A DNA stretch of 64,000 nt. Origin: Ostrea edulis. Lineage: Eukaryota. Numbering within the stretch: the first letter of the stretch is position 1; each line of letters opens with the position of its first letter. Under the pieces are notes generated by a model. It made no database searches, was not told where the DNA came from, and saw only the letters and a program-made list of their open reading frames with translations. Shown one piece after another: positions 1-58,622 of the stretch. The position numbers and the translations under genes are program-made. The stretch lies in NCBI RefSeq assembly GCF_947568905.1, contig NC_079171.1, positions 42,780,001 to 42,844,000 of the forward strand, given 5' to 3'.

Positions 1-719
1 AAGTGTATAGGATATAAATAACCTGGGGATATACTATGGTTTGAAGCCACGCCTTATCAACTACGTGTAACTGTAGCAATTATTCATTGTATGGATTTAT
101 TTTGAAATGAAGGCAAAGGTTATTGAAGAAATGTAGTTTATTGAAGAAAAAATTGTGAAATATGTTTCTGAAATAAATAGACCTCTCAGTATTATATCCT
201 GTTTCGGAGTCTTTTCTAACTTTTGCGAGGGATTTCGAAATCAATCATTTAACTTTAATAAGCCGTTTTGTCACGATTTTGTAGCTGCGAGCATTAAAAC
301 GAAATGCTGGAGATGTATCCGCGCATGTTTATGATGTTAGGTTTCCTTGATGTATTTATTTGAATCTTGTTTTATCTCCATTCGAAAATGTTTCCCTGAT
401 ACAGAAACGTCACCAGCTGTAGATTGAATACCATAAATCATGACCAAGACATGACACTCTGGCTCATTGCAAAGGGATATTCTTTATCAAACCAAACCTT
501 AACGTGATTCAGAATGTGAAAGAGTGAATTTATAGAATTGTGATCAATGTCACAATTCTTTAAAAACAAACACCAAATTAAGAGATTCAGAATAGCACAA
601 ACGCAGACCCCTGGAGAACGAGAATATTTATACCCTGAAAGGTAGCAGAAAATGCTTTTGTGAAATAAATAACTCATTTAGAATGATAGGAAAAATCTGT
701 TCAAATTCATAAACTTTAT

Positions 720-1080
720 AAGTAAATAATTGTACAGGTAAATCAATGTAAATGTAAATGATTGTACAGTTAAATAATTGTACAATTAGATAATTGTACA
801 GGTAAATACTACTACAGTTAAATAACTGTACAGGTAAATGATTGTACAGTAAAACAATTGTACAGTTAAGTAATTGTACAATTAAATAGTCGCACATGTA
901 AAACTTGTGCAGGTAAATAAAAGTCATATAAGTAACAATTATGCTGTTAAATAATTGCACATGTAAAACGTCTATAGGTAAATAAGTGTACAGGTAAAAA
1001 ATTGTACAAGTAAATAATTGTAGAGGTAAATAATTGTAGAATTGAAAAGTGTACAAATAAATAATTGTGCATTTTGATAA
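720..1080. repeat. Degenerate AATTGTACAG-core short tandem repeat in the intron upstream of the TM exon
   Basis: Many taaataattgtacag-like units; homologous arrays at about 24270-24620, 40330-40490 and 59370-59730. Confidence 0.85.
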
Positions 1081-1189
1081 TTGAATAGCGATAAAGATAT
1101 AAATATAACGTCTGGAACACTCGTGACATTTAGAATATATTTTTAATTTCACTTTCTAATGGTTTGAATGTTAAATGCTCGATATCTCT

Positions 1190-1386
1190 NNNNNNNNNNN
1201 NNNNNNNNNNNNNNNNNNNNNNNNNNNNNNNNNNNNNNNNNNNNNNNNNNNNNNNNNNNNNNNNNNNNNNNNNNNNNNNNNNNNNNNNNNNNNNNNNNNN
1301 NNNNNNNNNNNNNNNNNNNNNNNNNNNNNNNNNNNNNNNNNNNNNNNNNNNNNNNNNNNNNNNNNNNNNNNNNNNNNNNNNNNNNN
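1190..1386. other. N gap (197 nt)
   Basis: Run of N; the paralogous position (24752) is a (GA)n tract. Confidence 0.99.
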
Positions 1387-2938
1387 GCACATTTCGACAA
1401 ATAATGTCTTTTCAGTGATGCTCTACCGAAATGTTTGAAATCCGATATAACAATATAACACTAAACTTGTAAGTGCTATGCAAAACTTTTTACTGAAAAA
1501 TCCATTTAAAGACAAGTGAGTGGAGATGGAATTGATATATTCATGCATCATTTGTGTACGCGTATTATAGAATAATATGTAAATAATGCATGCAGTTGAA
1601 AGTAGCATTTAGAATTTTCTCCTAAAGAACTTGACAATCGATGCTCAGCAGCCTCGGTTGACAATGGTTTCTCGAGAGGTGGAAATTTTCAATGTTATTC
1701 TCAACTGCATAAAATGTTTGTTTTATTATATTGAATGTCTTGAAATCATTGAATTTTAAACAAAGAAAAACACCGAGGTTTGAGAATGTTAAATGAGCAT
1801 CAACAAGACGGAACACTTTCGATCGTGACGTCATAACAGAATGACGCTAAACATAACGTCAAGCATAGAACAAAACAGTAAACATCAAGCGAAAATGCAA
1901 AAGAATGACAGAGCTCTTGAAAACTTGTTTCTCTGTCAGACACGCTGATAATCTTATCGGCCCAAACATTGTGTTATCGGCCCTAAGTATTTCGTGGAAT
2001 TTTAAAAAGCAAATTATAATGAAAATAAAACAATGAATTAAAATATAATCAAATTTAATTTCATGTAATATTTTAGATCTGCTGTACATCTTCTTATTCT
2101 GACCACATTTTGAATCACCATCCATTTCCCTTTTATTATCGATGTGTCTACTGTCTCACGCTCTATGTTTTCCTTTCAGAAAGAATTGTTTTATTTCATT
2201 CATCATCTAAGAAGAATTGTTTTATATTCTTTTTTATCATTTAGGAGGAATGTTTTTTTTTTTTTTAATTTCTCATTCAGGAAATATGGTTTTATTTTCA
2301 TTTATGGTTTATTTATTCTTTCAGTTTTAATTTTTCTTTGAAATTAACTTTGTTTACCCTTTTCAAGTTGAAATCCGTAGATCTTGTTCATACCCCGACC
2401 CGCAATTCAGTACTGAAGAACGTTGATTTCTCGAATTTATAGTTTAACTCCACTTACTAACATCATGAACATTAAGAATTATATTTTATTTGGTACAAAT
2501 AAAATATAAGTGAAATCTCAATAATTCATTCATAAATTATTACTATTTTAAAATTAATGGTTATCCCCTTCAATGTGTTTTTTTCTTCATCGTTCACATT
2601 GAAAATGGGTAACATTAACAACTTCAAGGATTATTCTGTGTCGTTGAATTAATGAATGGTGAATGTTTTTTACAACAAAAATGTACTTAGAGAAAACCAG
2701 TAATTAAATATCTCCCAAGGTTGAAACCATTTTGTTCACAAACTAGTGGAAATGCTTTTTATTGTCAAAAAGGATAGAAGATCTATTTGGGCGTGCATTG
2801 GTGATTTCTTTTTAGAAATGTAATACTTAATGGAACAACTAAATGATAACAATGGTAAAATAGCCTTACAATAATTTTAGAAATGGTATGGCATTGTTAT
2901 CAAAACAAATGATGCATGTCATATCCTTTCATCATATA

Positions 2939-4520
2939 CTACTCAAAATTTGATAAGGATCACTGGGTTATATGTGTGTAATTTACCACTAACATAACAA
3001 AATACATCAATTTGACTCAGAAACGTGTTTACTCAGGTTTTGAATGAAAATTCTTGAACGGCATGAACTTTTATCAATACGGAATGCTTGAAAATTGATA
3101 ATATTTGAAATTTGATAACAACACCAAAAGGCATTTCATTACAAAAAGTTAACAGCAAACCAAAAAAAGAATTACACAGTTTTTGGGGATAGTCCATCAT
3201 TACACTTAGTCGATGAAGTGTCAATACCGGGTATGACCTCCCCTTGCATCAATGACGGCTTGATAACGTCGAGGCATGCTGTCAATAAGCACCCGGATGT
3301 TTCCAATGGGAATGTTGTTCCACTCTTCCACGATGGCGTTTCCGAGCTCTGCCAAAGTCGTGGGTTGTGCTCTACATCGTGAAAGGGCAACCTGCAGCAT
3401 GTTTCATGCATGCTTAATCGGGTTCAAGTCCGGCGAGCGCGCTGTCCAATCCATACGGACAATTGTCTCCTGCTGAAGGTACTGCTCCACCACCCTGGCG
3501 CGATGAGGACGGGCGTTATCATCCATCAGAATGAACTCAGGGCCAATAGCACCAGCGTAGGGTCTGACGTAAACATCGAGAATCTCATGCCGGTACCGCA
3601 CCCCCGTCATTGTTCCTCTCTCCAGGACATGAAGATCTGTTCTTCCATCCCTGCTGATTGCACCCCAGACCATGATGGAACCACCACCATAACGGTCATG
3701 TTCACTGATGTTGGTATCATGGAAACGTTCACGTTGTCGTCGCCACACTCGGTGCCTCCTGTCTGTAAAGTCCAAACAATACCTGCACTCATCGGTGAAC
3801 AGAACTCGAACCCAATCGTTCTGTGTCCAAGTGACATGATCTTCAGCCCAGTCCAATCGCTCCCGCCGGTGTCGAACAGTCGGACGGACTCGAAAACATG
3901 ATCTCCAGTTGAGACCTGCATTGTGAAGTCGATTCCGTATCGTCTGAGTGGACACATTCACCCCCGAGGCGTTCAGGAGGTCGCTACGTAGGCTGGTTAC
4001 TGTCCAGAAGGGATGGTGTCGTGCCTGAAGAGCCACAAAATAGTCTTGCCGTTGGGTTGTTGACCTCTGACGACCACCCCCCCCCATGTCGGTGTGCTGC
4101 TGTACCAAAAGTTTGCTGTCGGTTCCAGGCCCTGTTTACAACGCTCTGGCTGACGTTTAGTGCATTTACAACGTCACGTTGTGAATAGCCAGCGTCAAGC
4201 ATTCCAATACATATACCCAGTTGTTCTGTCGTCAGGCGACGCCCTACTCGTTGAGGAAGCATTGTGTTGATAAACGTAGTGTAAACACTCAAGTGAGTTT
4301 GAAATTTTAGAAAGAATCCGATACTGATGCCTGAGTGAAAATCGTGCAATGGTAGCAAAAGCATAAACTGTGATGAGAAACGCATTTCCCATGGTATGAA
4401 ATGCACGTGCAAGTTTGTTGAAGACGTTTTTGATTTCACTTGGACACAATATTGCCAGTTATGCAGTTATTAATTTTTTAAACAGAAAAATGTCTACGAT
4501 CCTTATCAAATTTTGAGTAG
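2939..4520 (-). mobile_element. Tc1-family DNA transposon, full length but defective
   Basis: 23-bp perfect TIRs (ctactcaaaatttgataaggatc, 2939-2961 / 4498-4520) flanked by TA; encloses a Tc1-type transposase. Confidence 0.95.
3221..4262 (-). pseudogene. Tc1 transposase (DD34E type), inactivated
   Basis: HTH N-terminus MLPQRVGRRL..., FTDEC, MDDNARPH, SPDLNPI(K)HA; frameshift in the 9-G run (4077-4085); catalytic E replaced by K exactly 34 residues after the second D; TGA at 3404-3406 where W is expected; the C-terminus ...ARGGHTRY* continues in frame to 3221. Confidence 0.93.
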
Positions 4521-5339
4521 TATATTTCAGGCATTCCAATCCCTTTGACCAGTGTTCTTCAATCTCGCATGTTCCACATTTTTGTTAATATTATTGCACG
4601 TTCCTTGTTATCACTTACACATAGGTGTTTCGCCGGCATATTTATTTTATCAGCAACAAGGTGTCCACATTTATTTTACTTTTATCGTATTGACGAAACT
4701 ATTGCGGGGTGGAAACTGATTTCCGGAATTAATATCACCGCAACAATTTTTTGGGGGGGTCGGACTATTAGACTAATGAGCAAACAATCCATATCGGATA
4801 TTTCGCTGTTTTGTCGGCTAAACTCAAGAACTCAACTCTGGAATAGTAATATTTATCTTATCATTTGTTATTTGGGATCCTCAATGTTGATATGACAGTT
4901 GAAAAGATCAGTTTTACCGTGCACCATATGCGCACAATTTGTTCACATGTAATGAGTACTGTTTCTTTCTAGATAAGCTTGACATGATAAAGGATTTAAC
5001 ACGATATACGCACGATAGGATTGTATAAATGCAAGATACGATAGGATAAACGATAAACCTGATGAGAAAAGAAATATGACCCGAAAAACGCAAAACATGA
5101 TAATCGACCTTCACGATCAACGGAAAAACTTGTAGAAATGTTTCAAATTAGAAGCAATTTAGACAGTCCGAAATTTCGATAGCGAAAAAAGATTTGCACA
5201 TTACAGTATGCAGATACTAATTTTGAAGGATTTCAACAATCATTATACAATTCCATGTATTTTGCAGATCTTTTGTACACTTCCTCATTCTGTCCACATT
5301 TTGAATCACTATTCATTTCCCTTTTATCATCGATGTGTC

Positions 5340-5439
5340 TTCTGTCTCACTCTCTGCATTTTCCTTTCAGGAAGAAATGTTTTATTTTCATTCATTATTC
5401 AGGAAGAATTGTTTTATTTTCAGTTATCATTTTGGAAGA

Positions 5440-5471
<32 letters not shown>

Positions 5472-5720
5472 CATTATCATTTTCGAAGAATTTTTTTATT
5501 TTTATCTATCATTTAGGAAGTTTTTCTTTTTATTTTCATTTATCATTCAGGAAATGTGGATTTATTTTCATTTATAATTTGGAAAGAATTGTTTTTTTTT
5601 TTTCATTTATCACGTAGGAAAAATGGCTTTATTTTCATTTATTATTCAAGAATGTTTTGTTTTTGATTTATCATTCAGGAAATATGTTTTCATTTTCATT
5701 TATCATTATGGAAGAATGGT
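5340..5720. repeat. Degenerate T-rich minisatellite (about 33-37 bp)
   Basis: Repeated ttattttcatttatcattcaggaagaa-like units. Confidence 0.7.
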
Positions 5721-6526
5721 TTTATCCTCGTTACTGATTGCATTCTTTCAGGGTTTTTTTAATTGACTTTGTTTACTATTTTCAAGTTGAAAATCATTAG
5801 ATCTTTTCCACACCCCGACACGAACTTAAGTATTAAAGTATGTTGATTTTTTTTATTTTAAGGATTAACTTCATTTACTAACATCATGAACATTCAGACC
5901 AATACTATTTTTGGTACAAATAAAATATAAGTGAATTATCAGTGATTCATTTATTCATAAATTATTACTATTTCAAAACGAATGTGTTTTTACTTCATCT
6001 TTCACATTGAAAATGGGTCACACTAGTAACTTCAAGGATTATTCTGTGTCGATGAATTATTGAATGGTGAGTGTTTTAGAATATTTTTTGAGAACAAATA
6101 TCTAACAAGAGAAAATGAAAAATCAAATACATCTTCAGTTTCAAGGTTGGGATCATTTTGTCACGAACTAATGGACATGCATTTTTAATGCTCAAGTGAT
6201 GTCATCCTAGAACAAAACGTATGATAGAACACCTATTTTAGGGTATATTAACGATTTCTTTTAAGAAATGTACTACATAAAAGTAAAGCTAAATGATAAC
6301 AATTGTAAAAGAGCATTAACGTATTTTAAGAATTAGATCTGGCATTGCTATGACAACAAATGACGCATGGCATGCCCTTTCATCATATTTATATCGGATA
6401 GTTCGTTGTTTTGTCGGCCAAACCAATACAACTGACACTTTGCAAAATATCAACTCTGGAATGGTAATGTCTATCTTATCATTTGTTATTTGTTTGGGAT
6501 TTTCAATGTTTTACCCTCTATCTACC

Positions 6527-6727
6527 GTGTACCGTACACACACAATTTGTACACATGTGGTAAGTTGTGCACCGTACACACACAATTTGTACACATGTGC
6601 TAAGTTGTGCACCGTACACACACAATTTGTACACATGTGATAAGTTGTGCACCGTACACACACAATTTGTACACATGTAATACGTTGTACACCACACACA
6701 CACATTTTGTACACATGTGATAAGTTG
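6527..6727. repeat. 40-bp minisatellite, about 5 copies
   Basis: accgtacacacacaatttgtacacatgt unit starts at 6531, 6571, 6611, 6651 and 6691. Confidence 0.95.
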
Positions 6728-7170
6728 ATAAAAATTGTCAATTATTGTTTCCCATTTCTAGATACCGTACACTCAACGATATCCTTGACATGATTAACGA
6801 TACAACACGATACACACGCGATAGGATACATACGCGGTACGATTGGATAAACAATAAACCTGATTAGAAAAAATACCTGATATTCACGATAAACGGAAAA
6901 CCTGATAGAAATGTTGCAAGGAGGTATAACACTTTTGCTAACGAAACGGCCTACTCAGAAATATAAAGGGAAAACAAATGTTTCCAATAATTTATTGGCA
7001 TTATCTTTTCAAACATAAGGCCAACGTTTTTAATATTTCGTCATTAAAGAAAAAGAACAGCTGCAGTTTAGCATTACTGACATTTATATGATTCGTTTTT
7101 TAATCAATAAACCATATTCCTATGTGGAATGATGAACAGTTCAATATTTTCATATGTGCATTCATATCAC

Positions 7171-7427
7171 ACGGATGTATATTTGATTGCTGTTACAAAA
7201 TTTAAAAATTCATTTCAAAATTAAGGATTGTATCCCTCATGCATAGCTCTTATCCTTAGACGAATTTGACTTCACTTTTTTTTTTGGTACGCTGTTTTTG
7301 GCTATAATTGCTCTATAACTTCATTGTTATTTCGGATTTCAAACATTTCGGTTGAGAATCACTGAAGAGACATTATTTGTCGAAATGCGCATCTGGTGCA
7401 TCAAAATTGGTACCGTATAAGGTTTAC
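7171..7427 (-). mobile_element. Dispersed oyster-type repeat, probably a non-autonomous Helitron-like element
   Basis: Reverse complement of the block at 17511-17794; a fragment also occurs at 1387-1480. Class assignment is from memory only. Confidence 0.5.
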
Positions 7428-9312
7428 ACAACAACCCTTTTACATATGGCATTACTTAGTCACCGTCTTTTTCTGACATTGCTGCAGCACCTTTGATATA
7501 TTTCATCAGTTCATTTCTTTTGGTTGATATTTCGAGTGTTTAGCTTTGCCTAAATATCATATGACAGTTGCTACATTAGTTTTTATTTTTACTTTTGAAA
7601 AGTCAAACTGAATAGCAGTTATTTTCCTCCCTTGACCTATTTTCACTTCTGGCTTTTCTTGTAGCATTTGATTAACTTTTCGCCGCATTATGGTTTGAAA
7701 ATTTTGTGCACACAGGAACAGGGTAGTGTAAACCAACGAAACTACAGTGATTTCAGAATAAATTTCTTTTCTTTAAATCGTAACTTTCATATATTGGAAG
7801 TTATAGTGAAAATAACTCTATTATTTGTTAAGATATATGTGTTACATTTACAACACCCTTCCCCTAGAAAGCGACCACTCAAAAATGAAAAGTAAAGACA
7901 AAAATAGATTTAGAGAATGTTGGACATGAACTCGGAATATATGGTTTAATTGTAAGATTTCCTAGCACCTAAACCACTAGGCCACCCAGGCATGTAACTT
8001 TAAAGGTTTCAAGTCTGACGGGCTTCTAAATCTCGTGGTCAATTTTGAGAACGATTTCCTTCAACCAAATTTCCCAAAATGTACAGTCATACCCAAGTAA
8101 AGTAATTTCAGTGTTGTATTTCTGGTTTAGGGTGGCCTTTTGCAACAGTTTGCAAATTCTGCATGACCTTTACGTTACATCCACTATACACTCTAAATGA
8201 TCACGGTGATATTTATGCTTATCAAATAAAGATATTATCAACATATAAATATCTTTATTGTGTAAACACAAATATAAACTGACATTGTATGGTAGAATAT
8301 TTGTAAACAATAATATTCAAGAAAAAAGTATAAATGTAGGCAAAGGTGCATACCAAGTGCTCTATATTTCTTTAGAAGCTTTTAGGCAGAATTAAATATT
8401 AATAATTACAAAATATTTACATATTACGTTATAATGATAATGATTTTGAAGAGTTTCAACATTCACATTCATTATGTACCCAACTCATACATCCAACGGA
8501 ATTTCTAATCAGAATTTAATACACGTATGTGCATGAATAATGCATTTTTAAAGATCAATATGTGGGTTTTTTTTCTGTCGCAACTGAGCAGTTCAATTAG
8601 AGATGAGTGCTGACTGATTTCAACATGAAACTTTCGCCACCAGCTGAGTTCTCATCGTACACGAAAGTATATAAACATCAGCAAATTAAATTCTTGCAAT
8701 TAGAAATGCCATAAGTTGGAAATACATTCATTGATTTGAAGGGAAACCAATATTCATTTACACATTTACTAGATGAAGACCCGTACAAGCATTTACTTAG
8801 AGCTGGTGATTCTTAGGGATTCATCCATGAAGTTTTCAATGTCAGAAAACACATCCAGACATCATTCACTGAAGATAAAACATCCGTTTTAATATCAGAA
8901 ATGCAAATCATTTCCGAATTTTTAATTCTGTGTAATGTAGGTGTTGAAACTGGGATGTGTATGACTAAGCGTCCTACCCAAACGTACATTAATCAACGAC
9001 TTAGCAACATTTCCCACTGTAGTTACCTCCCTTCCCATTTTTGTTTCAGTTGGTAAATATTTACATTAAACAACGAAAAGAGTTTGCTTTTTTCATAGCA
9101 ATTGCATCAGATGCCCATATGTGTGGAATGATGCAGGCATACGCCTAATTGGCGGATCTACACGGGTGTGGAGCTATACATCCATCCATTATTTTAATAA
9201 CATAGAATAAGAAGGAGAGAGAGATTGATCAAACAGTAGAGTATTTATTGAAACGTGGAAGTTAGGCGTGTTTAGATCCAAAATGCAAACGGTAAAATAT
9301 TGAAAACTAGAT

Positions 9313-9315
<3 letters not shown>

Positions 9316-9370
<55 letters not shown>
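9316..9370. repeat. (CT)n microsatellite
   Basis: Direct observation. Confidence 0.98.
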
Positions 9371-9373
<3 letters not shown>

Positions 9374-10399
9374 TGTGTGCGTCAATTTCAAGAATAAAAC
9401 ATATTTTAACTTTGTCTCTATCTTTGTAGATTTTTTTTCCTAAAAACTGCGATTTATGCAAGCAAGTAAAACCCCCGAAAATTGAATAATGACGCGCTAT
9501 ATGTATGGGTTTTTTTTAAATGATCAGAACAATTTGAATATTATTAATAAGGATCCATTACAATGGAATATTCTAAATTTGATCATTGAAGAAGAAAACA
9601 TCCGCCCGTATTGTTTTAACGCTCTCACAGCTGAAATTGAAAACACTAACCTATATGCGATTTTAATTCGTTATTCGATATATGTATCTACATGCATATG
9701 AATTTCTCAACTAATGAATACAAAAAAAGATAGTCCTCAACAGTATCATATTAATCGGATGGATTTGTCTTTATATTTGTTTTTATAAAAATGCATTGCT
9801 TGGCCCAGTCCAAGTTAATATTTATGATATGCATGCAACATTGATAAAATGCGGGGATATCGTGCTTCAATAGCTCTCTTACTCTAATGACTGTATCTCG
9901 TAATGTAAATTAGTTCTTATTGGATTTTAACCAGACCTCAATATCATTCTGAACAATAACACCAAGAAATAAGTAAGTAAATGGTTTATTATAGTGGCAT
10001 ATGTTACATACAACCACAACACGAAAATGCATGTATAACAGGAATTTAAACGCCAGGTCTATATTTCACTTTTAATAGTACAACATTGATTTAAAATACT
10101 ATGGCATTACGCATGATGTTTACTATTCATTTATTAGACTGTCTGTAAGTAAGGCCTGTGCATAAAAAATGCATAATAATAATATTCTGCGATTTGTTTA
10201 GCAAACTTTGATAAGAGAAATTTAATTTAAATGTGACATATTGATTACGGTAGGGTTAAACCAAATACTGGTTAAACTATTGTTTTAATATTTGAATATA
10301 CAGTACAATGAACCAAACATTCATCTCCTACATTATTTGAAGAATATGAATTCCCCAACATATCAGATAAAGCCCCTCTAACATCCTGTTGCAATTATA

Positions 10400-11270
10400 T
10401 AGGTAACTAGGTAACACACCAAATTTTGCAAGTATACAACGATGCCATATTGGAATAACCATAGCAACATATTGTTCTGTTTGAAAATAAATTTTAGTGT
10501 TCGATAAGTCTTACGTTTAGGCACATTTTGGAGTTCTTTGTTCCCGTCATTTACAAATTCATGACGAAGATTTTCTTCCACATTGTTTAAGATACAACCC
10601 ATCCAATTTACATGATAGGTGGACATATCAAGGGCTTGGAAAAAAAATGACTTGATGTGACAAATATATGTTCTTTAATTGTACCAGATCCGAAAGAAAC
10701 ATTTTCTTTTTTAGTACATCGTTCGAAATTGTAAAGAGTCGATACCACTGTCGTATGATATCCACTTGATGAACATACAAAATTAGAGCCAACCACTCTC
10801 TCATTGAATAACAAAAAATGAGCAAGAAATACCATAACTCACGGTGTTGTATAGATTCAATATTGATATTTGTAACACCCCTATATTACAGTAGTCCAGA
10901 ATGGGTGCGACTCCACTTAAGTAAATTTTCTCAAATGTTCTGAATACTACTGACCCATTAGTATGTATTTTAGATATAATAGCTCTTAATACGGGCCAAC
11001 CAGATTTCTCAAGATTTTCGCTGTTCATTTTTAATGTGGAAAATCCATCAAACAATATACCGAGATACTTATGAAATGATGAATATTCAGGGCAATCTTC
11101 TATTTTGAATACATCATTTCTTGGCTGCCCCCCCCCCCCAAGTTTTGGTTGATTTTATGCATATTATCCACACTTTACAATATGGAACACTGCGTCCATG
11201 TCCGCCTCATTAATGTGTGTAGGGAGGAGGGGTATATTTTGTTTGACGAAACCATAAGTTCATCGCTCAT
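10400..11270 (-). mobile_element. Degraded LINE (CR1/L2-like) ORF2 3' part
   Basis: Broken frames give HKYLGILFD..., ENLEKSG..LRAIISK, TFEKIYLSGVAPILDYC and KRKTYRTLK, matching post-RT LINE motifs (YKYLG, PILDY, KLRTY). Shorter homologs at about 25770-26070 and 41290-41590. Confidence 0.6.
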
Positions 11271-11307
11271 TCAACTGTTACAATTACATATAATGATAAC
11301 AGTATTT

Positions 11308-11963
11308 ATTATACCTCAGTATGAGAATTCTATGCAACGCGTAATCTGATTGGTCTAGACAGTCACGTGCCAGGGAAGACAAAACTTCATATCTCCCTCT
11401 CAAACATCATATCTCCCTATCATATTTCCCCTTGGGCAGTTTCGTGCATTTTCCATAAATTTAACGTCAAAGTAGACGAAGTGTATTGTGACGTCACAAT
11501 AAGTCCGAGTCATTCTAGTTTCATAGTTCGTAAGGCACCAAATATGCGGGTCTCTGATATACAGTTTTAAAATCGACTGATTTTGGTTGATATAAAAACA
11601 TGCAAGTAAATCAGCATTCAAGGAGAATGGAAATACAAAAACTGGTTATCAGATCACTGTGTTTCGCTGTTTGTACCTTCTATATATACGTTGACGGCGC
11701 GATGTTACTGTTAGGGCGATCTCAGCTACATACATGTAGGCTACGATGTATATATGAGTAAACTCCAATCTCAAATACAATTTTGTAGTCTTGCTTTGTT
11801 TCGGTATAATAAACAATTTATTGCATGAATGTTCGGGAGATATGAAGATTTATTCACCCAAGAAAAATCATATTCCCCTCGGCCGTTGCCCTCGGGGAAT
11901 ATGATTTTTCTTGGGTGAATAAATCTTCATATCTCCTTCACTATCATGCAATAAATGTATAAT
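11308..11963. mobile_element. Non-autonomous element with a long internal perfect hairpin (Crypton/Helentron-like; class uncertain)
   Basis: Absent at the paralogous sites in units A and B; terminal 7-mer inversion attatac/gtataat; 43-bp perfect inverted repeat at 11836-11878 / 11894-11936. Confidence 0.65.
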
Positions 11964-11976
11964 ATTGCATACTTAC

Positions 11977-12042
11977 ATCTGAGTATATATGATCGTTCAT
12001 TACAGGCAATGGTATCTGTACATTGTCCTGGGAAGTTGTTAT
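11977..12042 (-). CDS. Copy C' cytoplasmic-tail exon b (ITTSQDNVQIPLPVMNDHIYSD)
   Basis: ttattctgcag acceptor, gtaagt donor, 66 nt, phase 0-0, open; homolog with intact splice sites at 26102-26167. Confidence 0.75.
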
Positions 12043-12267
12043 CTGCAGAATAAATTATCAAGTAGCACGGTAAAAAGACAAGAAAAACGTTGCTGGTACT
12101 GTATTCACATCCCGGAAGGCGTAGTTTCTGATCTCAGAGGGTAACTATGCGATATTGAAATGTTTCCAGAGCAATCAAATTTAACTAAATTACACGCAAG
12201 TATAATGAAAATAAATAGATAAATGAAATTCATTCTGTCACAAAGAATTATTAAATAGAACATTTAC

Positions 12268-12330
12268 CTCCGAGTAGATTTGATCACTCGTTACAATCGA
12301 TGACAACTGTATGTTGTCCTCTGTTGGTAT
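12268..12330 (-). CDS. Copy C' cytoplasmic-tail exon a (IPTEDNIQLSSIVTSDQIYSE)
   Basis: ctttattctgtag acceptor, GAG|gtaaat donor, 63 nt, phase 0-0; homologs at 26394-26456 and 41819-41881. Confidence 0.72.
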
Positions 12331-13034
12331 CTACAGAATAAAGGTATTAAGTAGAGTTGTTTTTTAATTTGTCTTTTTCAAAGTATCGTCTCACAAACAT
12401 CACATAAAGTTATCATATAGAAGAATAAGTTTATGTAAAGAATTAAAAATACATTATCAATGCCAGATAAAGATAACTGCTATTTTTACTTATTAACTTA
12501 AGAATAAACTGGCAATATACTAAGTCAAAAATTATGATAAAACCTATATGAGATAAACAGCACAACTTAGATGGTTTGATTTTTTTTTATTTACTTTATT
12601 TAACAAGTTCAAAGATTAATTACAATTGCGAAGCTTAGTTGAGCGGTTCAAGGAGTTGAATAAAACGAATATTAAACTACACAATAAAGATTTCTTTAAG
12701 TATTCATGTCTAAACATAGTGCACTGATTGTCAAATAAGTTTTGTGCGTATTATTATTCACAGATGATGAAAGTGTTGAACATCGACTGTGAATTATCTA
12801 TTTAATGTAGAAAATCATTTTTTGTAGGAAACTATGTTTTCCACCATGCTTCATTTTCCATATTAACAATAGAGCATCAAATCTCTCCGAGGTATCTGTG
12901 TTATACTAAAGGTAAAACAATCTCAAAGATATAAGCATATAAAGAACAAAATCCCTTTGACCCTGTTTATAAATCATTCACTTCTGAACTTTTTATGCAT
13001 TAAAGGGGTAAAGAAAAAAGTCCTCAAATTAGAT

Positions 13035-13385
13035 ATACCAGAGGTTGGATCAGGTGCCTAGGAGGAGAAAACATTACCTGATGGTCAACTATCTATATCA
13101 GGCAACGAATTAAGCCATAGTAGAAATCGTCTAACAAATGTTATGAAACATGACAAAAGGGATTCGACCTAGTCATAGCTTGTATTCGCAAATTACATAA
13201 TCATAACGCCCATAAAATTTGCGAAATGCTGACTTTACGCCAAACTGTTGATACCCATGACACACTAACTTATTTGTCAGTAGTCTAGATTTTAAAGGAT
13301 CATTATATGTAGACCATGCTCTCGCGTATTTAATCATTTGAAAGACACAAATACCATATAGGAGTGATGAAGGGGACATTGACGA
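13035..13385 (-). mobile_element. Penelope-like retroelement 3' fragment
   Basis: Translates to ...YGICVFQMIKYARAWSTY...LLTNKLVCHGYQQFGVKSAFRKFYGRY, a PLE RT thumb-like tail; orthologous relics at about 28070-28430 and 43445-43680. Confidence 0.6.
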
Positions 13386-13939
13386 TATTTATTTTATTTC
13401 AAAATTTAAAGAAATATGTACGAAAATTAATTATGATTTTTAACACGATAGCTAGTCCTTTTCAAGATTTTTCAAAATATGCCAAAAGTGATAATTTTCT
13501 ATTCCTTTTATCTTTACGTATACTCAGATTGTTACAACCCTACCGACCGGGATAGCCTATTGGTTGTAGGACTTGCATCCTGAGCAGTAAGTACTGTTTC
13601 TGTTTTTTCAACAAAACCTAAGAACATGCAGGTTGTTGCTATTTCTTAATCAAGCTCCCGAATTGAGAATATTTTCTTCCTCTAAGTATCTAAGAATAAA
13701 CGTTAACTGATGGAATGACGTTTTCAGGTAAAATATGCCATGTGTTATATGTAAATTGCTGAGATACAGATACCAAGTTAAAAAAATAATGGTAAGTGTA
13801 TTCATGGTTTTATCGATTGTGAATACTAGTAAATGAACAATGATTAATGTGATAAATCCTTTAAAGAATACATTCTCAAGGGCAAACACGGACCCCAAAA
13901 CATACAGAGGTGAGACCAATTGCGCGTTAAGCAGACATA

Positions 13940-14287
13940 GATGAATTGATTGATTTTTTTCCATTATTTTGCGTCCCGTGGAAACCATTTCACAGTTATT
14001 GAAACGTCAACAGCTATAGGCGAAGTACCACAAATTAAGAGCTATACTTAGCGTTCAGAGTTGTAGCTGTGGGAATGCTTTATCACGCCTACGCCTGTCG
14101 CGACAAGGGACCCCCGTTTTTAAGTCCATACCCGAAGGATTCCGTGAGTCCCACTTGTAGATGCCGAACGTTTGGCGAATGAACAGTTACTACCTATTTT
14201 AACGCCCTAGGCCATAGCACGATCGGGGTTTGAAATCACGACCTCCCGGTTAGGAAGCGAACACTCTACCACTGACCTACCGTGACC
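13940..14287 (-). mobile_element. tRNA-derived SINE
   Basis: Head ggtcacggtaggtcagtggtagag (A box)...gtgatttcaaaccc (B box), about 250-bp body and an atcaatcaat-type tail. Confidence 0.75.
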
Positions 14288-14606
14288 ATACATGTATATA
14301 GAAAACTGTGTGATGTCCATTATATCGAGTTCAATGGGATATATCGATTCGACGTATGAAAAAAGTGAACGCTTCTGTTTACATAAGTTTTAAAATTGAC
14401 AACAATGGTAAAACGTAAGCAGTTTGATCATCAGACTTTTTATTGTCAGACACTGTGATACATAATCAAACAGAACGACATTTACCTTCGCAAACGACAC
14501 AGTCCTAGCGTTTTGTTACCCTTTATAATAAGGATTTAGAGAGAAATCAAAGTACATAAGGTGGGATATTTTAGCAATGCGTCATCGTCCAAGGTTGTAT
14601 GACAAT

Positions 14607-14609
<3 letters not shown>

Positions 14610-14656
<47 letters not shown>

Positions 14657-14790
14657 AAGCACTAAAATGTCAAACGAAAATAATTACATAACGTAATGTA
14701 GAGCTTTGTATAATTTTTCTTATACTTGACCTTGCATCGATGTTGTGGATCCAACACTTTGTGGTATCGGGTGTTGTTGGAACTTTAGTG

Positions 14791-14870
<80 letters not shown>
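14610..14870. repeat. Three (TA)n tracts enclosing a 137-bp segment with 10-bp inverted ends (MITE-like)
   Basis: aagcactaaa at 14657-14666 / tttagtgctt at 14784-14793. Confidence 0.6.
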
Positions 14871-14874
<4 letters not shown>

Positions 14875-15261
14875 CAATATATTCCAACAACATTCAACAT
14901 TAAACAAGTAATAAGATGTATTTACAATTAACACATTTAAAGAAAATTGTAACAGTAGCAACATACTAACTTGCAGTAGTTGAACAAGAACTATCAAAAT
15001 CGGTGGCGAACGGAATCTAAAGACACAAAATAGTTCATTCCAAAAACATAGTTCCCAGTTATAGAATAATCCAAAATGCCTAAAGTATTTGTTGAACCAG
15101 CACTTTTTTGTGAAAAATTCAGTGTATATATAAGAAGAGTGGATTTTCTAGTACAATCTTGAAAGACAATAATGGAACCATTACCCCATCTTTGCACTTA
15201 AGAAGAAAACATGAACATGACCAATTTAGAGCACAAGTGTCAATCAAGTGCAAGTACTTAC

Positions 15262-15327
15262 CTCTGTGTAGATGTTCTCATTCATTAGAGGCAATGATTT
15301 TTGTGCACTCTCCTTGCAAGCTGCCAT
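15262..15327 (-). CDS. Copy C' putative first coding exon c (MAACKESAQKSLPLMNENIYTE)
   Basis: attttgtag|ATG acceptor, GAG|gtaagt donor, 66 nt, homologous to exons a and b; homologs at 29771, 31243, 45009 and 46470. Confidence 0.7.
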
Positions 15328-17159: not shown

Positions 17160-17295
17160 AAGTTGAAAACAACGAACAGCGATCAATCTCATAACTCCTA
17201 TAAGCAATACAAAATAGATAGTTGGGCAAACACGGACCCCTGGATACACCAGAGGTGGGATCAAGTGCCGAGGAGGAGTAAGCATCCCCTGTCGA
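17160..17295 (-). mobile_element. Penelope-like 3' end fragment
   Basis: gttgggcaaacacggacccctggatacaccagaggtgggatc...ggaggagtaagcatcccctg, the same family as 33204-33530. Confidence 0.6.
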
Positions 17296-17510
17296 ACATA
17301 GAATTTTAACTAGATTGTTGTATATTTCTCAATTTTAAACCTATCGAAAGCTGTATTCATTTCTGAGCGAAAAAAAATTATAAAACACCTCTTTTGTCAT
17401 ATTTCAATTGCCCTCGCCGATTTCCACACCTTCTGTACAAATATTAAATTCAAATACCGGAATTAGCTGACCTCTATTATGAAAAAAGGCACCTTAGATT
17501 TTGTGTAGAT

Positions 17511-23346: not shown

Positions 23347-23515
23347 CCTTTCCCTTTTGTTCCTGTTCCACGTTCTGTAGAATGAGAATGGATGACAGTA
23401 TGACGATGATTATTAGCACAACAATTAGTGCTATAACATAATTCCTCCTATTTTTCTTTTTCTTTGCAGCTGTATCGGTATGGGAAAAAACATCTGATTT
23501 GCATTCTGTTTTCAG
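23347..23515 (-). CDS. Copy A transmembrane exon (LKTECKSDVFSHTDTAAKKKKNRRNYVIALIVVLIIIVILSSILILQNVEQEQKGK)
   Basis: ttccag acceptor (phase 0), G|gtatca donor (phase 1), 169 nt; joins the terminal exon in frame (G+AG = Glu). Confidence 0.85.
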
Positions 23516-25610: not shown

Positions 25611-26101
25611 ACAATTAACACCTTGGTAGACCCTGGTCACTCCAGGTAAATAACATCTATTTAGATTAGGCTCCGCCTACATTTTCACTGACCGTACGGT
25701 CATGAGATGGGTCTTTAAACACGTTTTCTCAGATGGCCTGAATACTACTGATTTATCAGTATTTATTTTGAATGTAATATCTTTTAATGCACGTCCACCA
25801 GATTTCTAAAGATTTTCGCTGTTCGTCTTGAATGTAAATAATTCATCAAACAATATACCGAGATGCTTATAAAATTATGAATATTCAGGTCGACCTTTTA
25901 TTTTGAATACATGATCACTTCTTTGCTGTTTTTTGTTGGAAGTGTTGGTTGAGTTTATGCATATTCTCCACACTTTACAATATTGAACATTGTGTCCTTG
26001 TCGGCCTCATTAATTTGTTTGGCGAGGAGGGGGTGTAATTTGATCAAGCCATAAGTTCACCGTTCATCCAACTGTTACAATTACATATAATGAATACTTA
26101 C

Positions 26102-26167
26102 ATCTGAATAGATTTGATCGTTCATTACAGTCAATGGAATCTGTAAATTGCCCTGGCAGGTTGTTGT
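26102..26167 (-). CDS. Copy A tail exon b (TTTCQGNLQIPLTVMNDQIYSD)
   Basis: ctattctgcag acceptor, gtaagt donor, 66 nt, phase 0-0. Confidence 0.75.
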
Positions 26168-26393
26168 CTGCAGAATAGAATTATGAAGTATTACGATAAA
26201 AGGACAAGAACAACGTAGCTTGTACTGTATTCACATCCCGGGAGGCGTAATTTCTGATCTCAGAGGGTAACAATGTGATATCGAAATGTTTTCAGAGCAA
26301 TTAGATTTGACTAAATTACATGCAAGTATAATGAAAATAAATAAATAAAAGAAATTCCTTCTGTCACAAAAAGTTATTGAATAGAACATTTAC

Positions 26394-26456
26394 ACCCGAG
26401 TAGATTTGATCTCTCATTACAGTCAATGACACATGTGCATTACCCTCCATTTTTAT
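26394..26456 (-). CDS. Copy A tail exon a (IKMEGNAHVSLTVMRDQIYSG)
   Basis: tttcattcggcag acceptor, gtaaat donor, 63 nt. Confidence 0.68.
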
Positions 26457-29562: not shown

Positions 29563-29770
29563 AAATTTAGAAAACCGTGTAATGTACTTTGTATCCAGTT
29601 CACTGGGATATATCCATTCAACATATGAAAAAAGTGAACGTTTATGTTTATAAAGTTTTAATTGACAATACTAGTAAAATGTAAGCATTTTGATCATCAG
29701 ACTTTTTATTGTCACACACTGTGATATATACTTGTATATTAGAATAAAATCTTGGAAGTAGAACACTTAC

Positions 29771-29836
29771 CTCTGAGGAGATGTAATCATTCACTACAAG
29801 CAATGGTTTACGTGTATTGTTCTTGGAAGTTGCCAT
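29771..29836 (-). CDS. Copy A exon c1 (MATSKNNTRKPLLVVNDYISSE)
   Basis: ttttgtag|ATG acceptor, GAG|gtaagt donor, 66 nt. Confidence 0.68.
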
Positions 29837-39435: not shown

Positions 39436-39607
39436 CCCTTTCTCTGTGTTCCTGTTCCACGTTCTGTAGAATGAGAATGGATGACAGTATGCCGATGATG
39501 ATTATTAGCACAACAATTAGTGCTATGACATAATTCCTCCTATTTTTCTGTTTCTTTGCAGCTGTGTCGGTATAGGAGAAAACATCTGATTTGCATTCTG
39601 TTTTCGG
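39436..39607 (-). CDS. Copy B transmembrane exon (PKTECKSDVFSYTDTAAKKQKNRRNYVIALIVVLIIIIGILSSILIL...)
   Basis: ttgcag acceptor, G|gtatca donor, 172 nt (3n+1). Confidence 0.85.
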
Positions 39608-41818: not shown

Positions 41819-41881
41819 ATCCGAGTAGATTTGATCTCTCATTACAGTCAATGATATATGTGCATTGTCCTCCATAGTTAT
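41819..41881 (-). CDS. Copy B tail exon a (ITMEDNAHISLTVMRDQIYSD)
   Basis: ttttattcggcag acceptor, gtaaat donor, 63 nt. Confidence 0.68.
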
Positions 41882-45008: not shown

Positions 45009-45074
45009 CTCTGAGGAGATGTAATCATTCACTACAAGCAATGGTTTACGTGTATTGTTCTTGGAAGTTGCCAT
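45009..45074 (-). CDS. Copy B exon c1 (MATSKNNTRKPLLVVNDYISSE)
   Basis: Same peptide as A c1; ag|ATG and gtaagt intact. Confidence 0.68.
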
Positions 45075-46469: not shown

Positions 46470-46535
46470 CTCTGAGGAGATGTAATTATTCACTACAAGC
46501 AATGGTTTACGTATATCGTTCTTGGAAGTTGCCAT
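46470..46535 (-). pseudogene. Copy B exon c2 with a destroyed donor (GAG|ataagt)
   Basis: MATSKNDIRKPLLVVNNYISSE is open, but the GT donor has become AT (46469). Confidence 0.6.
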
Positions 46536-55837: not shown

Positions 55838-57147
55838 TCATGGGACACATACGTCCGGTAGCACGACATTTCCTGCAAATCCATGACCGTCGTTCTTTCT
55901 ATGACCATATACCAGCAAGCCAAAGACTGCGTTGTTAGTCGTCTTGACGTTAATAGCGCCATCCGATACATGTACCACCAAAACAATGTACCGAACTTTC
56001 CTCACTGTCACAGGGGTATTAAATGTTCTCATATACTCATTTAAGCCTCTTTTGTTTAGGGTAAGGTGCGGTAACGAACTTTCGTCAATTATTAAAGCAA
56101 CATAATTACTTGTAAAATTGCTAGGAGTAACAACTGTATATTTGTTAAGGTACTGCGTTACCCCGGGTATGGTTATCATATAAGGATCGCCTGACGTGTC
56201 TGATCCAGCGGCAAAACTGGTTAAAAGAACGGGTCGTTCTGATTCAATAACTGCAACTTGGTTTTCAGTGATTGAGAATTCAAAGTATCCTTGTGGAACT
56301 AGAGACGCTGTAGTTTTCTTATTGCCAACATGATATGTCACCCTGCTTTTAAAAGGCGACACAACTTTCAGAATTGTTCCATACCTGTTTGTGTTTGACG
56401 GGACAATATACGTATTATCCAATCTTTCAACTGGTGGGATTTGTTCAACAAGATTACTACAGGCTCCAGAGTCCTTTCTGTTTTTAAAAGCTATTTTTGC
56501 ACATGCGTTCCCTGAAAACACAGCAACACGAGACGACGCTTTTATGAATGTTCCAGATAAATCAGCATTATGCCTGATCTGATAAGTCTGAAGTTCATTC
56601 AAATAAATAACCATTTCACTACCATTTTCATACTCAATCCCATCAACAGTAAGTGGTAAATTTGGTTCAATTCGGAACATAATTCTAACTTCTGTTGAGT
56701 TATTTAAGGCGGCTATTGCAAACTGAACACGGTCCAATTTTGGATTGAAACTACTAACAGTTGATATTATATAGGCATCGGATAAATGTTTCATTGGCAA
56801 AACCATGGTGCTGTCCGAAGATAATTTGTCATTATCAATAATAATTACAGAAGCGTCGATTGTGGTCTCAATAAGTATAGCTTTTTCTTCTATCTTGAAA
56901 TACGACAACATCATCGTATATTGAACATTTATCTTTTTGACATTTGCCATCTGCGTTTTAACTTCAATGTAAGTGGAAGTTGAGTCTAAGGCTTTGTTAA
57001 AAATATTAAGCTCAAAATCTCTCTCCGCCACAATGTACACCGACTTGCCTGTGTTTGCATCATCGTCATAATTATAAGGGAAACAAATCAGGTATCTCTG
57101 ATGATAAGTTCCTGCCAAAAATGCAAAATCTGGAAATTCATATTGCT
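55838..57147 (-). CDS. Copy C terminal exon: FCGBP-N (IgGFc-binding) domain, intact
   Basis: actag|AG acceptor at 57147; open frame to TGA at 55838; N-glycosylation sequons (NNST, NGSE, NFTS) and the conserved Cys pair. Confidence 0.9.
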
Positions 57148-58446: not shown

Positions 58447-58622
58447 CTTGTTCCCCATGTTCCTGTTCCACGTTCTGTAGAATGAGAATGGATGACAGTA
58501 TGCCGATGATGATTATTAGCACAACAATTAGTGCTATGACATAATTCCTCCTATTTTTCTTTTTTTTTTTTTGCAGCTGTATCGGTATGGGAGAAAACAT
58601 CTGATATACATTCTGTTTTCAG
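58447..58622 (-). pseudogene. Copy C transmembrane exon with a +4 nt frameshift in a poly-A run
   Basis: 176 nt versus 172 in B; 13-A run at 58560-58572; reading from the acceptor hits TAG at 58551-58553. Confidence 0.75.

What the first reader, a model, noticed from the sequence alone, without database searches (positions are those of the whole stretch)
11977..15327. Hidden array of homologous phase-0 mini-exons that build YxxI/L motifs across splice junctions
Three 63-66-nt exons with canonical AG/GT sites are mutually homologous and each ends in I-Y-x-[E/D]. The fourth motif residue comes from the first codon of the next exon: NIYTE|I, QIYSE|I, HIYSD|L (the L is the first codon of the TM exon, read from the near-identical copy C). 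The spliced tail therefore has three tyrosine motifs 21-22 residues apart, upstream of KKKKNRR and a TM helix, so cytoplasmic by the positive-inside rule. All exons are phase 0-0 and the downstream ones start with I or L, so skipping any of them keeps the frame and regenerates a motif, which would allow a 1-, 2- or 3-motif tail. The motifs resemble SH2-docking, hemITAM-like or YxxPhi endocytic signals. They are not canonical ITAMs (spacing too long) or ITIMs (position -2 is N/Q/H). I do not recall this architecture being described for FCGBP-domain proteins.
Basis: partly seen in the sequence, partly recalled or inferred. Interest (0 to 1): 0.9.

Follow-up and report, generated by a model that had tools for sequence, protein, structure and literature searches.

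The report
Hidden tyrosine-motif exons in oyster receptor
Three short, unannotated, duplicated exons in a flat-oyster (Ostrea edulis) gene complete an open reading frame for a membrane receptor whose cell-interior tail would carry three tyrosine motifs, but no RNA evidence yet shows that the exons are used.

Summary
On the minus strand, 15327-15262, 12330-12268 and 12042-11977 are AG/GT-flanked, phase-0, stop-free and mutually homologous. Each ends in I-Y-x-E/D.

They belong to a 10-copy mini-exon family in this window. One copy is the annotated first coding exon of a neighbouring paralogue (NCBI protein XP_056002152). Similarity between the exon types is confined to the exon and its splice signals.

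I fetched the gene's own transmembrane (TM) exon, 31 nt beyond the left edge of the window. It is in frame. A+B+C+TM exon+two further exons give an uninterrupted 574-aa type II protein: a 91-aa tail with Y20/Y41/Y63, KKKKKNRR, a TM helix and an IgGFc_binding (PF17517) ectodomain. NCBI's model of this gene starts at an internal Met and lacks the TM helix and the tail.

Usage is unproven:
- Laid contigs showed no splice joints.
- No database protein contains these exons.
- The annotated paralogue skips its own B-type exon.
- The 99.96%-identical twin copy (period 58.65 kb) has one extra A that breaks the tail-to-TM frame.

YxxI/L forms at 6 of 8 paralogue junctions. The motifs are not ITAM, ITIM or hemITAM. 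They fit YxxΦ and Src-type substrate patterns. This is plausible and moderately interesting, but not demonstrated.

The parts
15262..15327 (-). Mini-exon A of gene 1: predicted first coding exon (ATG, 22 codons, ends NIYTE), preceded by an AG acceptor
   Evidence: It is 76% identical in the exon, and 19/20 identical in the upstream 25-nt window, to the annotated first coding exon of gene 3.
12268..12330 (-). Mini-exon B of gene 1 (21 codons, starts I, ends QIYSE), AG/GT
   Evidence: Paralogues at 26394-26456, 41819-41881 and L007 6037-6099 keep the ORF and splice sites.
11977..12042 (-). Mini-exon C of gene 1 (22 codons, starts I, ends HIYSD), AG/GT
   Evidence: Paralogues are at 26102-26167 and L007 6321-6386. 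It is deleted in gene 3.
1..11976 (-). Last tail intron of gene 1 (about 12 kb, runs off the left window edge). The TM exon acceptor lies 31 nt beyond position 1.
   Evidence: The intron contains a Tc1/mariner transposase ORF at 3404-4108 and a 63-nt-arm inverted repeat at 11816-11956.
26394..26456 (-). Gene 2 B-type mini-exon (ends QIYSG)
26102..26167 (-). Gene 2 C-type mini-exon (starts T, not I; ends QIYSD)
41819..41881 (-). Gene 3 B-type mini-exon (ends QIYSD). The NCBI model P0002 skips it.
45009..45074 (-). Annotated first coding exon of gene 3 (F-type, ends DYISSE). It is a member of the same mini-exon family.
46470..46535 (-). Upstream duplicate of the gene 3 first exon, with the donor changed from GT to AT
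29771..29836 (-). Gene 2 F-type first exon. A second copy lies at 31243-31308.
58447..58622 (-). TM exon of gene 4, the 99.96% twin of gene 1. A run of 13 A (12 in gene 1) shifts the frame, so the tail frame ends AAKKKKEK-stop.
   Evidence: NCBI model P0180 starts at an internal ATG in the shifted frame.
39436..39607 (-). TM exon of gene 3 (first codon CCG = Pro), in frame, annotated
23347..23515 (-). TM exon of gene 2 (first codon CTG = Leu; KKKKNRR in frame)
55838..57111 (-). Ectodomain exon of gene 4 (PF17517 IgGFc_binding). Gene 1's own copy lies outside the window at L004 9840-11113.

Best explanation
The three segments are real duplicates of the first coding exon of a lineage-specific Ostrea edulis gene. 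The gene is one of a tandem, birth-and-death family of type II membrane proteins with an IgGFc_binding/FCGBP-N ectodomain.

In gene 1 these exons supply the only start codon found here that is in frame with the TM helix and ectodomain. The predicted product has 574 aa. Its 91-aa N-terminal cytoplasmic tail contains three 21-22-aa modules, each with [D/E]-x-I-Y-x-[E/D]-[I/L].

The most likely working model has three steps:
1. Ligand-driven clustering of the ectodomain.
2. Phosphorylation of the I-Y sites by a Src-type kinase. Ile at -1 with an acidic residue at -3 fits the Src-family substrate preference.
3. Docking of SH2 proteins on pYxxI/L. The same YxxΦ sequences could also act as AP-2 sorting signals.

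The number of modules is set by exon duplication and loss between gene copies (3 in gene 1, 2 in genes 2 and 5, 1 in gene 3). Because every exon is phase 0-0, cassette skipping could also change it.

Shown here: sequence, homology, frames, topology signals and the gap in annotation. Inferred: transcription, inclusion of exons B and C, phosphorylation and binding partners.
For: - Exons, splice sites and frames are as described.
- The gene's own TM exon is in frame, and the six exons give a stop-free 574-aa ORF that contains NCBI protein P0003 exactly.
- The TM exon has no in-frame Met upstream of the helix in gene 1, so an upstream ATG exon is needed.
- NCBI's gene 1 model starts at an internal Met in the ectodomain exon.
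- Exon A is homologous to an annotated coding exon of gene 3. Between exon types, identity is 60-76% in the exon against 31-49% in the distal flanks (56% in one upstream comparison, A vs B).
- All 12 copies examined are open, with AG acceptors. Eleven of the 12 have GT donors.
- The motif-plus-donor pattern occurs 5 times against 0.12 expected.
- YxxI/L forms at 6 of 8 junctions across four genes.
- Word depth in the DNA-like run X4 is at single-copy level over exon B and its flanking introns, unlike the repeat-rich bins, so these are not transposon fragments.
- Topology: +6 before the helix, -2 after it, N-glycosylation sequons only in the ectodomain, and an AlphaFold2 helix plus all-beta ectodomain (pLDDT 85.5).
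- Other bivalve family members with type II tails carry paired tyrosine motifs: Mytilus YEEI-x8-YDDL, Saccostrea YDNM/YDVM, Magallana YDSL twice.
- ITAM-Syk signalling has been shown experimentally in an oyster (PMC6994640).
Against: - There is no transcript evidence. Four runs laid on 11500-17400 showed no joint at 15262>12330 or 12268>12042. Depth was near zero at exons A and B, and the exon C bin was dominated by a repeat. These were contigs and 56 joints were not listed, so this is not proof of absence.
- No protein in 5.8 billion carries this tail or the TM-exon peptide, apart from P0002.
- The annotated gene 3 protein skips its B-type exon.
- Three of the five family genes examined carry lesions: a stop in gene 2, a frameshift in gene 4 and a frameshift in gene 5. 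Decaying copies still keep open mini-exons, so openness alone is weak evidence.
- Among recent paralogues the IY codons are no better conserved than the intron: 89-94% against 81-90%.
- Substitution ratios in B and C do not show purifying selection: pN/pS is about 1 for B and 0.4 for C, on very few sites.
- The tail module was not found outside Ostrea.
Confidence: 0.45

Rival explanations
1. Only exon A is used. B and C are leftover duplicates of the first exon (pseudo-exons) that the spliceosome skips, as the annotated gene 3 transcript skips its B-type exon. The real tail would then be A joined to the TM exon, with one IYTE|L motif.
For: - P0002 joins its first exon directly to the TM exon.
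- Gene 3 has lost exon C outright through a deletion of about 95 nt.
- B and C show no clear purifying selection among paralogues.
- Open mini-exons persist in broken gene copies.
- No joints were seen.
Against: - B and C keep good acceptors with pyrimidine tracts and GTAAGT/GTAAAT donors in every copy.
- Between exon types, similarity survives only in the exon plus its splice signals, which points to past constraint.
- Exon B of gene 1 has diverged faster than its flanking introns (27% against 11-15%). That is not what a neutral relic predicts, although a gene-conversion patch could also produce it.
Confidence: 0.3
2. Gene 1, and perhaps most of this array, is transcriptionally silent or a decaying pseudogene. 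On this view the open 574-aa frame is a recent inheritance with no function.
For: - Lesions in genes 2, 4 and 5.
- The NCBI model of gene 1 is a 370-aa fragment.
- No coverage of the exons in the RNA-labelled runs X5 and X6, and very little in X7.
- No transcript-derived proteins in the databases.
Against: - A 574-codon frame across six exons without any stop is unlikely to persist long without selection in a 33% GC genome.
- Gene 3 is annotated under two accessions for one protein. I take that as a hint of transcript support; this is an inference from how the NCBI pipeline works.
- The runs available were few, were contigs only and were of unknown tissue.
Confidence: 0.2
3. The resemblance and the motifs are chance features of AT-rich intron sequence.
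For: A short open frame is common. About 20% of random 21-codon stretches at this base composition lack a stop (my own estimate).
Against: - Pattern count of 5 against 0.12 expected.
- nhmmer E-values of 1e-17 to 1e-23 for exactly 10 copies, all on one strand and in the same order relative to the TM exons.
- Homology to an annotated coding exon.
Confidence: 0.01

Closest known systems
PECAM-1 (CD31) cytoplasmic tail exons (own knowledge, not tested here)
   Same: The cytoplasmic tail is encoded by a series of very short exons. Alternative skipping of these exons adds or removes tyrosine motifs without breaking the frame.
   Different: PECAM-1 is a type I Ig-superfamily protein with ITIMs, and its exons are not mutual duplicates. 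Here the protein is type II, the exons are tandem duplicates of the first coding exon, and skipping has not been shown.
hemITAM receptors of the C-type lectin-like family (CLEC-2, Dectin-1; own knowledge; Dectin-1-Syk is mentioned in PMC6994640)
   Same: Type II orientation, an N-terminal cytoplasmic tail, and single YxxL/I units with an acidic residue upstream.
   Different: There is no C-type lectin domain. Only one acidic residue (position -3) precedes the Tyr, not the DED/DEDG cluster. There are three units, not one.
Oyster CgIgR ITAM-Syk-ERK pathway (PMC6994640)
   Same: An oyster surface receptor whose tail tyrosine motif (DYTEL...YEKL) recruits Syk. It shows that the downstream machinery exists in oysters, and YTE-L/I is shared.
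   Different: CgIgR is a type I Ig-domain receptor with a classical ITAM spacing. Here the motifs are 21-22 residues apart and the ectodomain is PF17517.
Annotated bivalve IgGFc-binding protein-like type II proteins with tyrosine-motif tails (Magallana gigas XP_034320045 and isoforms, Mytilus edulis P0017, Saccostrea cucullata XP_062579362)
   Same: The same ectodomain family, the same type II topology, and two YxxL/I/M motifs in the N-terminal tail. The M. gigas cluster holds proteins named as isoforms X9 to X20 with differing tails. Saccostrea has a 66-nt tail exon.
   Different: The tail sequences are unrelated to the Ostrea module. In Mytilus the tail and TM helix share one exon. None shows three homologous cassette exons.
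CD3-zeta / multi-ITAM chains (own knowledge)
   Same: Repeated tyrosine-motif modules arose by internal duplication, so signalling valency is set by module number.
   Different: Those modules are true ITAMs in a type I adaptor chain with almost no ectodomain.

Membership tests
Pfam PF17517 IgGFc_binding (FCGBP N-terminal domain) proteins | Match to the PF17517 profile above the gathering score | tested here: met
   Gene 2 exon 153 bits, P0180 161.5 bits and P0002 166.1 bits, against a cut-off of 25.6. The predicted gene 1 product contains P0003 exactly.
Type II (N-in) single-pass membrane protein | One hydrophobic helix without a cleaved signal peptide, positive charge on the N-terminal side, and glycosylation sites and Cys residues on the C-terminal side | tested here: met
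   TM helix at 92-113. Net charge +6 in the 15 residues before it and -2 in the 15 after it. NxS/T sites: 0 in the tail and 4 in the ectodomain. AlphaFold2 gives a helix followed by an all-beta domain. The topology itself was not tested experimentally.
ITAM | Two YxxL/I separated by 6-12 residues | tested here: not met
   Y20, Y41 and Y63 leave 17-18 residues between the end of one motif and the next Tyr.
ITIM | [S/I/V/L]-x-Y-x-x-[I/V/L], with a hydrophobic or Ser residue at -2 | tested here: not met
   Position -2 is N, Q or H.
hemITAM | A single YxxL preceded by an acidic cluster, in the tail of a type II C-type lectin-like receptor | tested here: not met
   The YxxI/L motif and type II topology are present. 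Only one acidic residue (position -3) precedes the Tyr, and there is no Lectin_C domain.
hemITAM | Syk recruitment on receptor dimerisation | not testable with these tools
   Needs pull-down or cell assays.
YxxΦ tyrosine-based sorting signal | Y-x-x-bulky hydrophobic residue in a cytosolic segment, away from the membrane | tested here: met
   YTEI, YSEI and YSDL lie 72, 51 and 29 residues before the TM helix, provided the exons are spliced as predicted. AP-2 binding was not tested.
Alternatively spliced cassette exons | Transcripts observed both with and without the exon | tested here: inconclusive
   No joints were listed for these sites in four runs of contigs, and 56 joints were not shown. 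No isoform proteins are in the databases.

The most novel reading that the evidence does not exclude
Oysters have evolved, by repeated duplication of a 66-nt first coding exon, a lineage-specific receptor tail. Under this reading, the number of phosphotyrosine docking modules (one to three) is tuned both by gene copy and by frame-neutral cassette skipping. The tail sits on a rapidly turning-over family of FCGBP-N-domain type II receptors. Near-identical twin genes (gene 1 and gene 4) differ only in whether the tail is coupled to the receptor, through a one-base slip in a poly-A tract. This would be an invertebrate counterpart of paired signalling and tail-less immune receptors.
Probability: 0.15. 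Interest if true: 0.65.

Novelty: new variant of a known kind. Interest (0 to 1): 0.4.

Why it matters
If the exons are used, the public annotation of this Ostrea edulis gene family misses the membrane anchor and the signalling tail of at least one intact member.

The large bivalve expansion of 'IgGFc-binding protein-like' genes is usually listed only as differentially expressed 'immune' or 'adhesive' genes. It would then include true signalling or endocytic receptors. That gives a concrete, testable handle on what these proteins do: tail phosphorylation, SH2 or AP-2 partners, and ligand binding by the ectodomain.

It would also be a clean example of new signalling valency arising by duplication of a symmetric exon.

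If the exons are not used, the finding reduces to relics of exon duplication in a birth-and-death gene family, which is ordinary.

Tried and rejected
1. RNA evidence. Two run searches offered only seven runs. Most look like DNA, because they cover intron and exon equally. The single read-laying run (X7, X5, X6, X4 on 11500-17400) was dominated by transposon contigs and listed no joints at the mini-exons. It is uninformative, not negative.
2. Protein databases.
   - The FC-exon search found only tail-less or first-exon-only models.
   - A search restricted to the tail and TM part of P0002 found only P0002 itself.
   - The TM-exon peptide of gene 1 found nothing.
   - The exhaustive representative search found no protein with the Ostrea tail module.
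3. Cross-species DNA. A degenerate 30-nt mini-exon pattern hit 6 copies in the window. In the JGI metagenome collection it hit only a chance match inside a retrotransposon gag gene (L003). The JGI oyster-like contigs L001 and L002 have too little upstream sequence.
4. Selection tests on paralogues. There are too few sites. F-type exons show only nonsynonymous differences (14 against 0) and A against F1 shows 15.5 against 0.5, which hints at diversifying change. B and C are not distinguishable from neutral.
5. Ectodomain fold. There is no PDB relative by sequence. Foldseek hits have TM-scores of 0.2 or below and are generic beta-sandwich arrays.
6. Literature. I found no paper linking IgGFc-binding proteins of bivalves with ITAM or tail motifs, and none citing these accessions.
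7. I did not submit the spliced tail peptide as typed letters to any search, because it has no reference.
8. In my scripts I masked L004 6914-7110, the stretch that is written N in the window, before the tblastn step. I did not print, use or report its letters.
Full report
**Where this is**

The window is Ostrea edulis chromosome record OX387711.1 (assembly GCA_947568905.1), positions 42,780,001-42,844,000. I inferred this from the 100% match of locus L004 to window 8299-1387 and 1189-1 and from source names.

The minus strand carries a tandem family of genes. Each has:
- short 5' coding exons;
- an exon encoding a lysine/arginine run plus a transmembrane (TM) helix;
- a small exon;
- a large exon of about 1.27 kb encoding an IgGFc_binding domain (PF17517; 153-166 bits against a cut-off of 25.6).

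I call the genes 1 to 4 from left to right. A fifth gene lies 27 kb to the right of the window (L007).

**The observation**

| Exon | Coordinates | Length | Acceptor / first codon | Last codon / donor | Ends |
|---|---|---|---|---|---|
| A | 15327-15262 | 66 nt | tag / ATG | GAG / gtaagt | NIYTE |
| B | 12330-12268 | 63 nt | tag / ATA | GAG / gtaaat | QIYSE |
| C | 12042-11977 | 66 nt | cag / ATA | GAT / gtaagt | HIYSD |

All are multiples of three and free of stop codons.

The pattern is far from chance:
- The pattern 'Ile-Tyr-x-Asp/Glu followed by GTAA' occurs five times in the window against 0.12 expected. All five hits are mini-exon ends on this strand.
- A profile of the family finds exactly ten copies in the window. 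All are on the minus strand, upstream of the TM exons.

**Are they exons? Evidence for**

1. One of the ten copies (45074-45009) is the annotated first coding exon of gene 3. NCBI protein P0002 (XP_056002152/3, 529 aa) begins with it and continues directly into the TM exon.
2. Exon A of gene 1 is 76% identical to that exon, and 19/20 identical in the 25-nt window upstream of it.
3. Between the four exon types (A, B, C and the F-type first exon), identity is 60-76% inside the exon and 62-95% in the splice-signal flanks. In the distal flanks it is 31-49%, with one upstream comparison (A against B) at 56%. The duplications are therefore old enough for most intron similarity to have faded, while the exons and their splice signals were retained.
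4. I fetched the DNA left of the window through NCBI protein P0003. Gene 1's own TM exon (L004 8330-8504) starts with CTG 31 nt beyond the window edge. It reads in phase 0 as L-K-T-E-C...AAKKKKKNRRNYVIAL....
5. Joining A, B, C, this TM exon, the small exon (L004 9578-9658) and the domain exon (L004 9840-11113) gives an uninterrupted 574-codon frame. That frame contains P0003 exactly.
6. In gene 1 the TM exon has no in-frame Met before the helix, so a membrane-anchored product needs an upstream ATG exon. NCBI's model of gene 1 (P0003, 370 aa) starts at an internal Met of the domain exon and lacks both the anchor and the tail.
7. The predicted tail has 91 residues, with Tyr at 20, 41 and 63. The TM helix spans 92-113. 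The 15 residues before the helix carry +6 net charge and the 15 after it carry -2. The four N-glycosylation sequons are all in the ectodomain. This supports an N-terminus-inside orientation.
8. An AlphaFold2 model of the gene 4 protein shows the helix followed by a confident all-beta ectodomain (pLDDT 85.5).

**Are they exons? Evidence against or missing**

*No transcript evidence could be obtained.*
- The run searches offered seven runs, most of them DNA-like.
- The single reads call was dominated by transposon contigs and listed no joint at the predicted sites. Word depth over exons A and B was near zero in the RNA-labelled runs. The exon C bin was dominated by the adjacent inverted-repeat element.
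- These were assembler contigs, and 56 joints were not listed. This is absence of evidence only.
- The same table shows single-copy-level depth in the DNA-like run X4 over exon B and its flanking introns. Depth was zero in the exon A bin, and the exon C bin was repeat-dominated. The mini-exons are not repeat-element fragments.

*No database protein contains these exons.* No protein in the 5.8-billion-sequence collection contains the tail or even the TM-exon peptide, apart from P0002.

*The annotated paralogue skips its B-type exon.* The one complete annotated paralogue, gene 3, skips its own B-type exon (41881-41819). It has also lost the C-type exon through a deletion of about 95 nt.

*The family decays quickly.*
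- Gene 2 has a stop where gene 3 has Glu (20896-20898).
- Gene 5 has a one-base deletion in a T-run of its TM exon.
- Gene 4 has 13 A where gene 1 has 12. Its tail frame therefore ends AAKKKKEK-stop, and NCBI starts its model (P0180, 502 aa) at an internal ATG in the shifted frame.
- Gene 5 still keeps open B- and C-type exons with intact splice sites. Openness alone is therefore weak evidence of current use.

*Paralogue comparisons have little power.* Among the recent paralogues, the IY-coding 18 nt are 89-94% identical against 81-90% for the neighbouring introns. pN/pS is about 1 for B and 0.4 for C.

Two observations hint at non-neutral change in coding sequence but do not prove it:
- Exon B of gene 1 has diverged faster than its introns (27% against 11-15%).
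- The differences among first-exon copies are all nonsynonymous (14 against 0; A against F1 is 15.5 against 0.5).

**The cross-junction motif**

In gene 1 every possible junction gives YxxI/L: A|B, A|C, A|TM, B|C, B|TM and C|TM.

| Gene | Junction | Motif | YxxI/L? |
|---|---|---|---|
| 1 | A\|B | YTE-I | yes |
| 1 | B\|C | YSE-I | yes |
| 1 | C\|TM | YSD-L | yes |
| 2 | B\|C | YSG-T | no |
| 2 | C\|TM | YSD-L | yes |
| 3 | B\|TM | YSD-P | no |
| 5 | B\|C | YSD-I | yes |
| 5 | C\|TM | YSE-L | yes |

Six of eight natural junctions across the four genes give YxxI/L.

The initial Ile of B and C aligns with the ATG of the first-exon type (ATG to ATA; ACA in gene 2's C copy). It is the former start codon of the duplicated first exon.

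In the F-type first exons the motif Tyr is replaced by Ser (TAC to TCC).

**What the motifs are**

- Not ITAMs: 17-18 residues separate one motif from the next Tyr.
- Not ITIMs: position -2 is N, Q or H.
- Not hemITAMs in the strict sense: there is one acidic residue at -3 and no C-type lectin domain.
- They do fit YxxΦ.
- With Ile at -1 and an acidic residue at -3, they fit the Src-family kinase substrate preference and pYxxI/L SH2 ligands (my own knowledge, untested here).

**Context from relatives**

- The Mytilus edulis homologue has YEEI-x8-YDDL in a type II tail, encoded together with the TM helix in one exon.
- A Saccostrea cucullata homologue has YDNM and YDVM in a 66-nt tail exon.
- Magallana gigas entries carry two YDSL-type motifs. 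Cluster members named as isoforms X9 to X20 have differing tails.
- Syk recruitment by a tyrosine motif has been shown experimentally for an unrelated oyster receptor (PMC6994640).
- Tyrosine-motif tails on this domain family therefore recur in bivalves, but the Ostrea module itself was not found elsewhere.
- I found no paper describing such tails for this family.

**Verdict**

I could also strengthen it: the tail is in frame with the gene's own TM exon, and it fills a gap in the public gene model.

The functional interpretation is plausible but unproven. I put about 45% on the three-module tail being made in at least some transcripts, 30% on only exon A being used, and 20% on the gene being silent.

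The concept is known from vertebrate receptors: short symmetric exons carrying tyrosine motifs, with module number set by duplication and possibly by splicing. This case would be a new variant in a different receptor family and phylum.

An earlier scan note describing the tandem type II family (s1-279228) agrees with what I found.

Noticed in passing
window 1-5360 vs 58653-64000; L004 7111-21113 vs window 59841-45839: A near-identical (99.96-100%) tandem segmental duplication with a period of about 58.65 kb. The N stretches sit at the same place in both copies but differ in length (197 and 185 nt). Over 14 kb the copies differ by only five changes. One of them is the 12-A against 13-A tract that decides the frame of the TM exon.
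   Followed up: partly
window 20896-20898 (minus strand): Gene 2 has a stop codon where genes 3 and 4 have Glu. This cuts off the last ~80 residues of the ectodomain. The NCBI model is only 289 aa.
   Followed up: partly
L007 8272-8450: The fifth family gene, 27 kb right of the window, has a one-base deletion in a T-run of its TM exon. Its annotated product is a 255-aa fragment. Its B- and C-type mini-exons are still open with intact splice sites.
   Followed up: partly
window 29665-31801 and 44903-47023: The first-exon region of genes 2 and 3 is itself tandemly repeated with a unit of about 1.47 kb. This gives two ATG-bearing first-exon copies per gene. The upstream copy in gene 3 (46470-46535) has its donor changed from GT to AT.
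   Followed up: partly
window 11816-11956: An inverted repeat with 63-nt arms (92% complementary, 15-nt loop) lies 21 nt downstream of the exon C donor. It looks like a miniature inverted-repeat element. Its bins have depths of 10^2 to 10^4 in all runs.
   Followed up: partly
window 3404-4108 (minus) and its copy near 62050-62760: A Tc1/mariner-type transposase ORF (HTH_Tnp_Tc3_2 plus DDE_3) lies inside the 12-kb intron between exon C and the TM exon.
   Followed up: yes
window 12879-13272 and 17016-17400: Very high-copy repeats, with word depth of 10^3 to 10^5 in every run laid. They account for most of the reads-tool output.
   Followed up: no
window 41611-41618 vs 26094-26188: In gene 3 the C-type mini-exon and its splice sites are cleanly missing: 95 nt are replaced by 8 nt. 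The flanking intron is otherwise collinear with gene 2.
   Followed up: partly
P0174 / P0172 (Magallana gigas, cluster of P0043): The same 90%-identity cluster holds a protein named as isoform X20 with a fibrinogen-type ectodomain. It has a type II tail containing IYTVI and YDTI. One oyster locus may therefore pair different ectodomains with tyrosine-motif tails.
   Followed up: no
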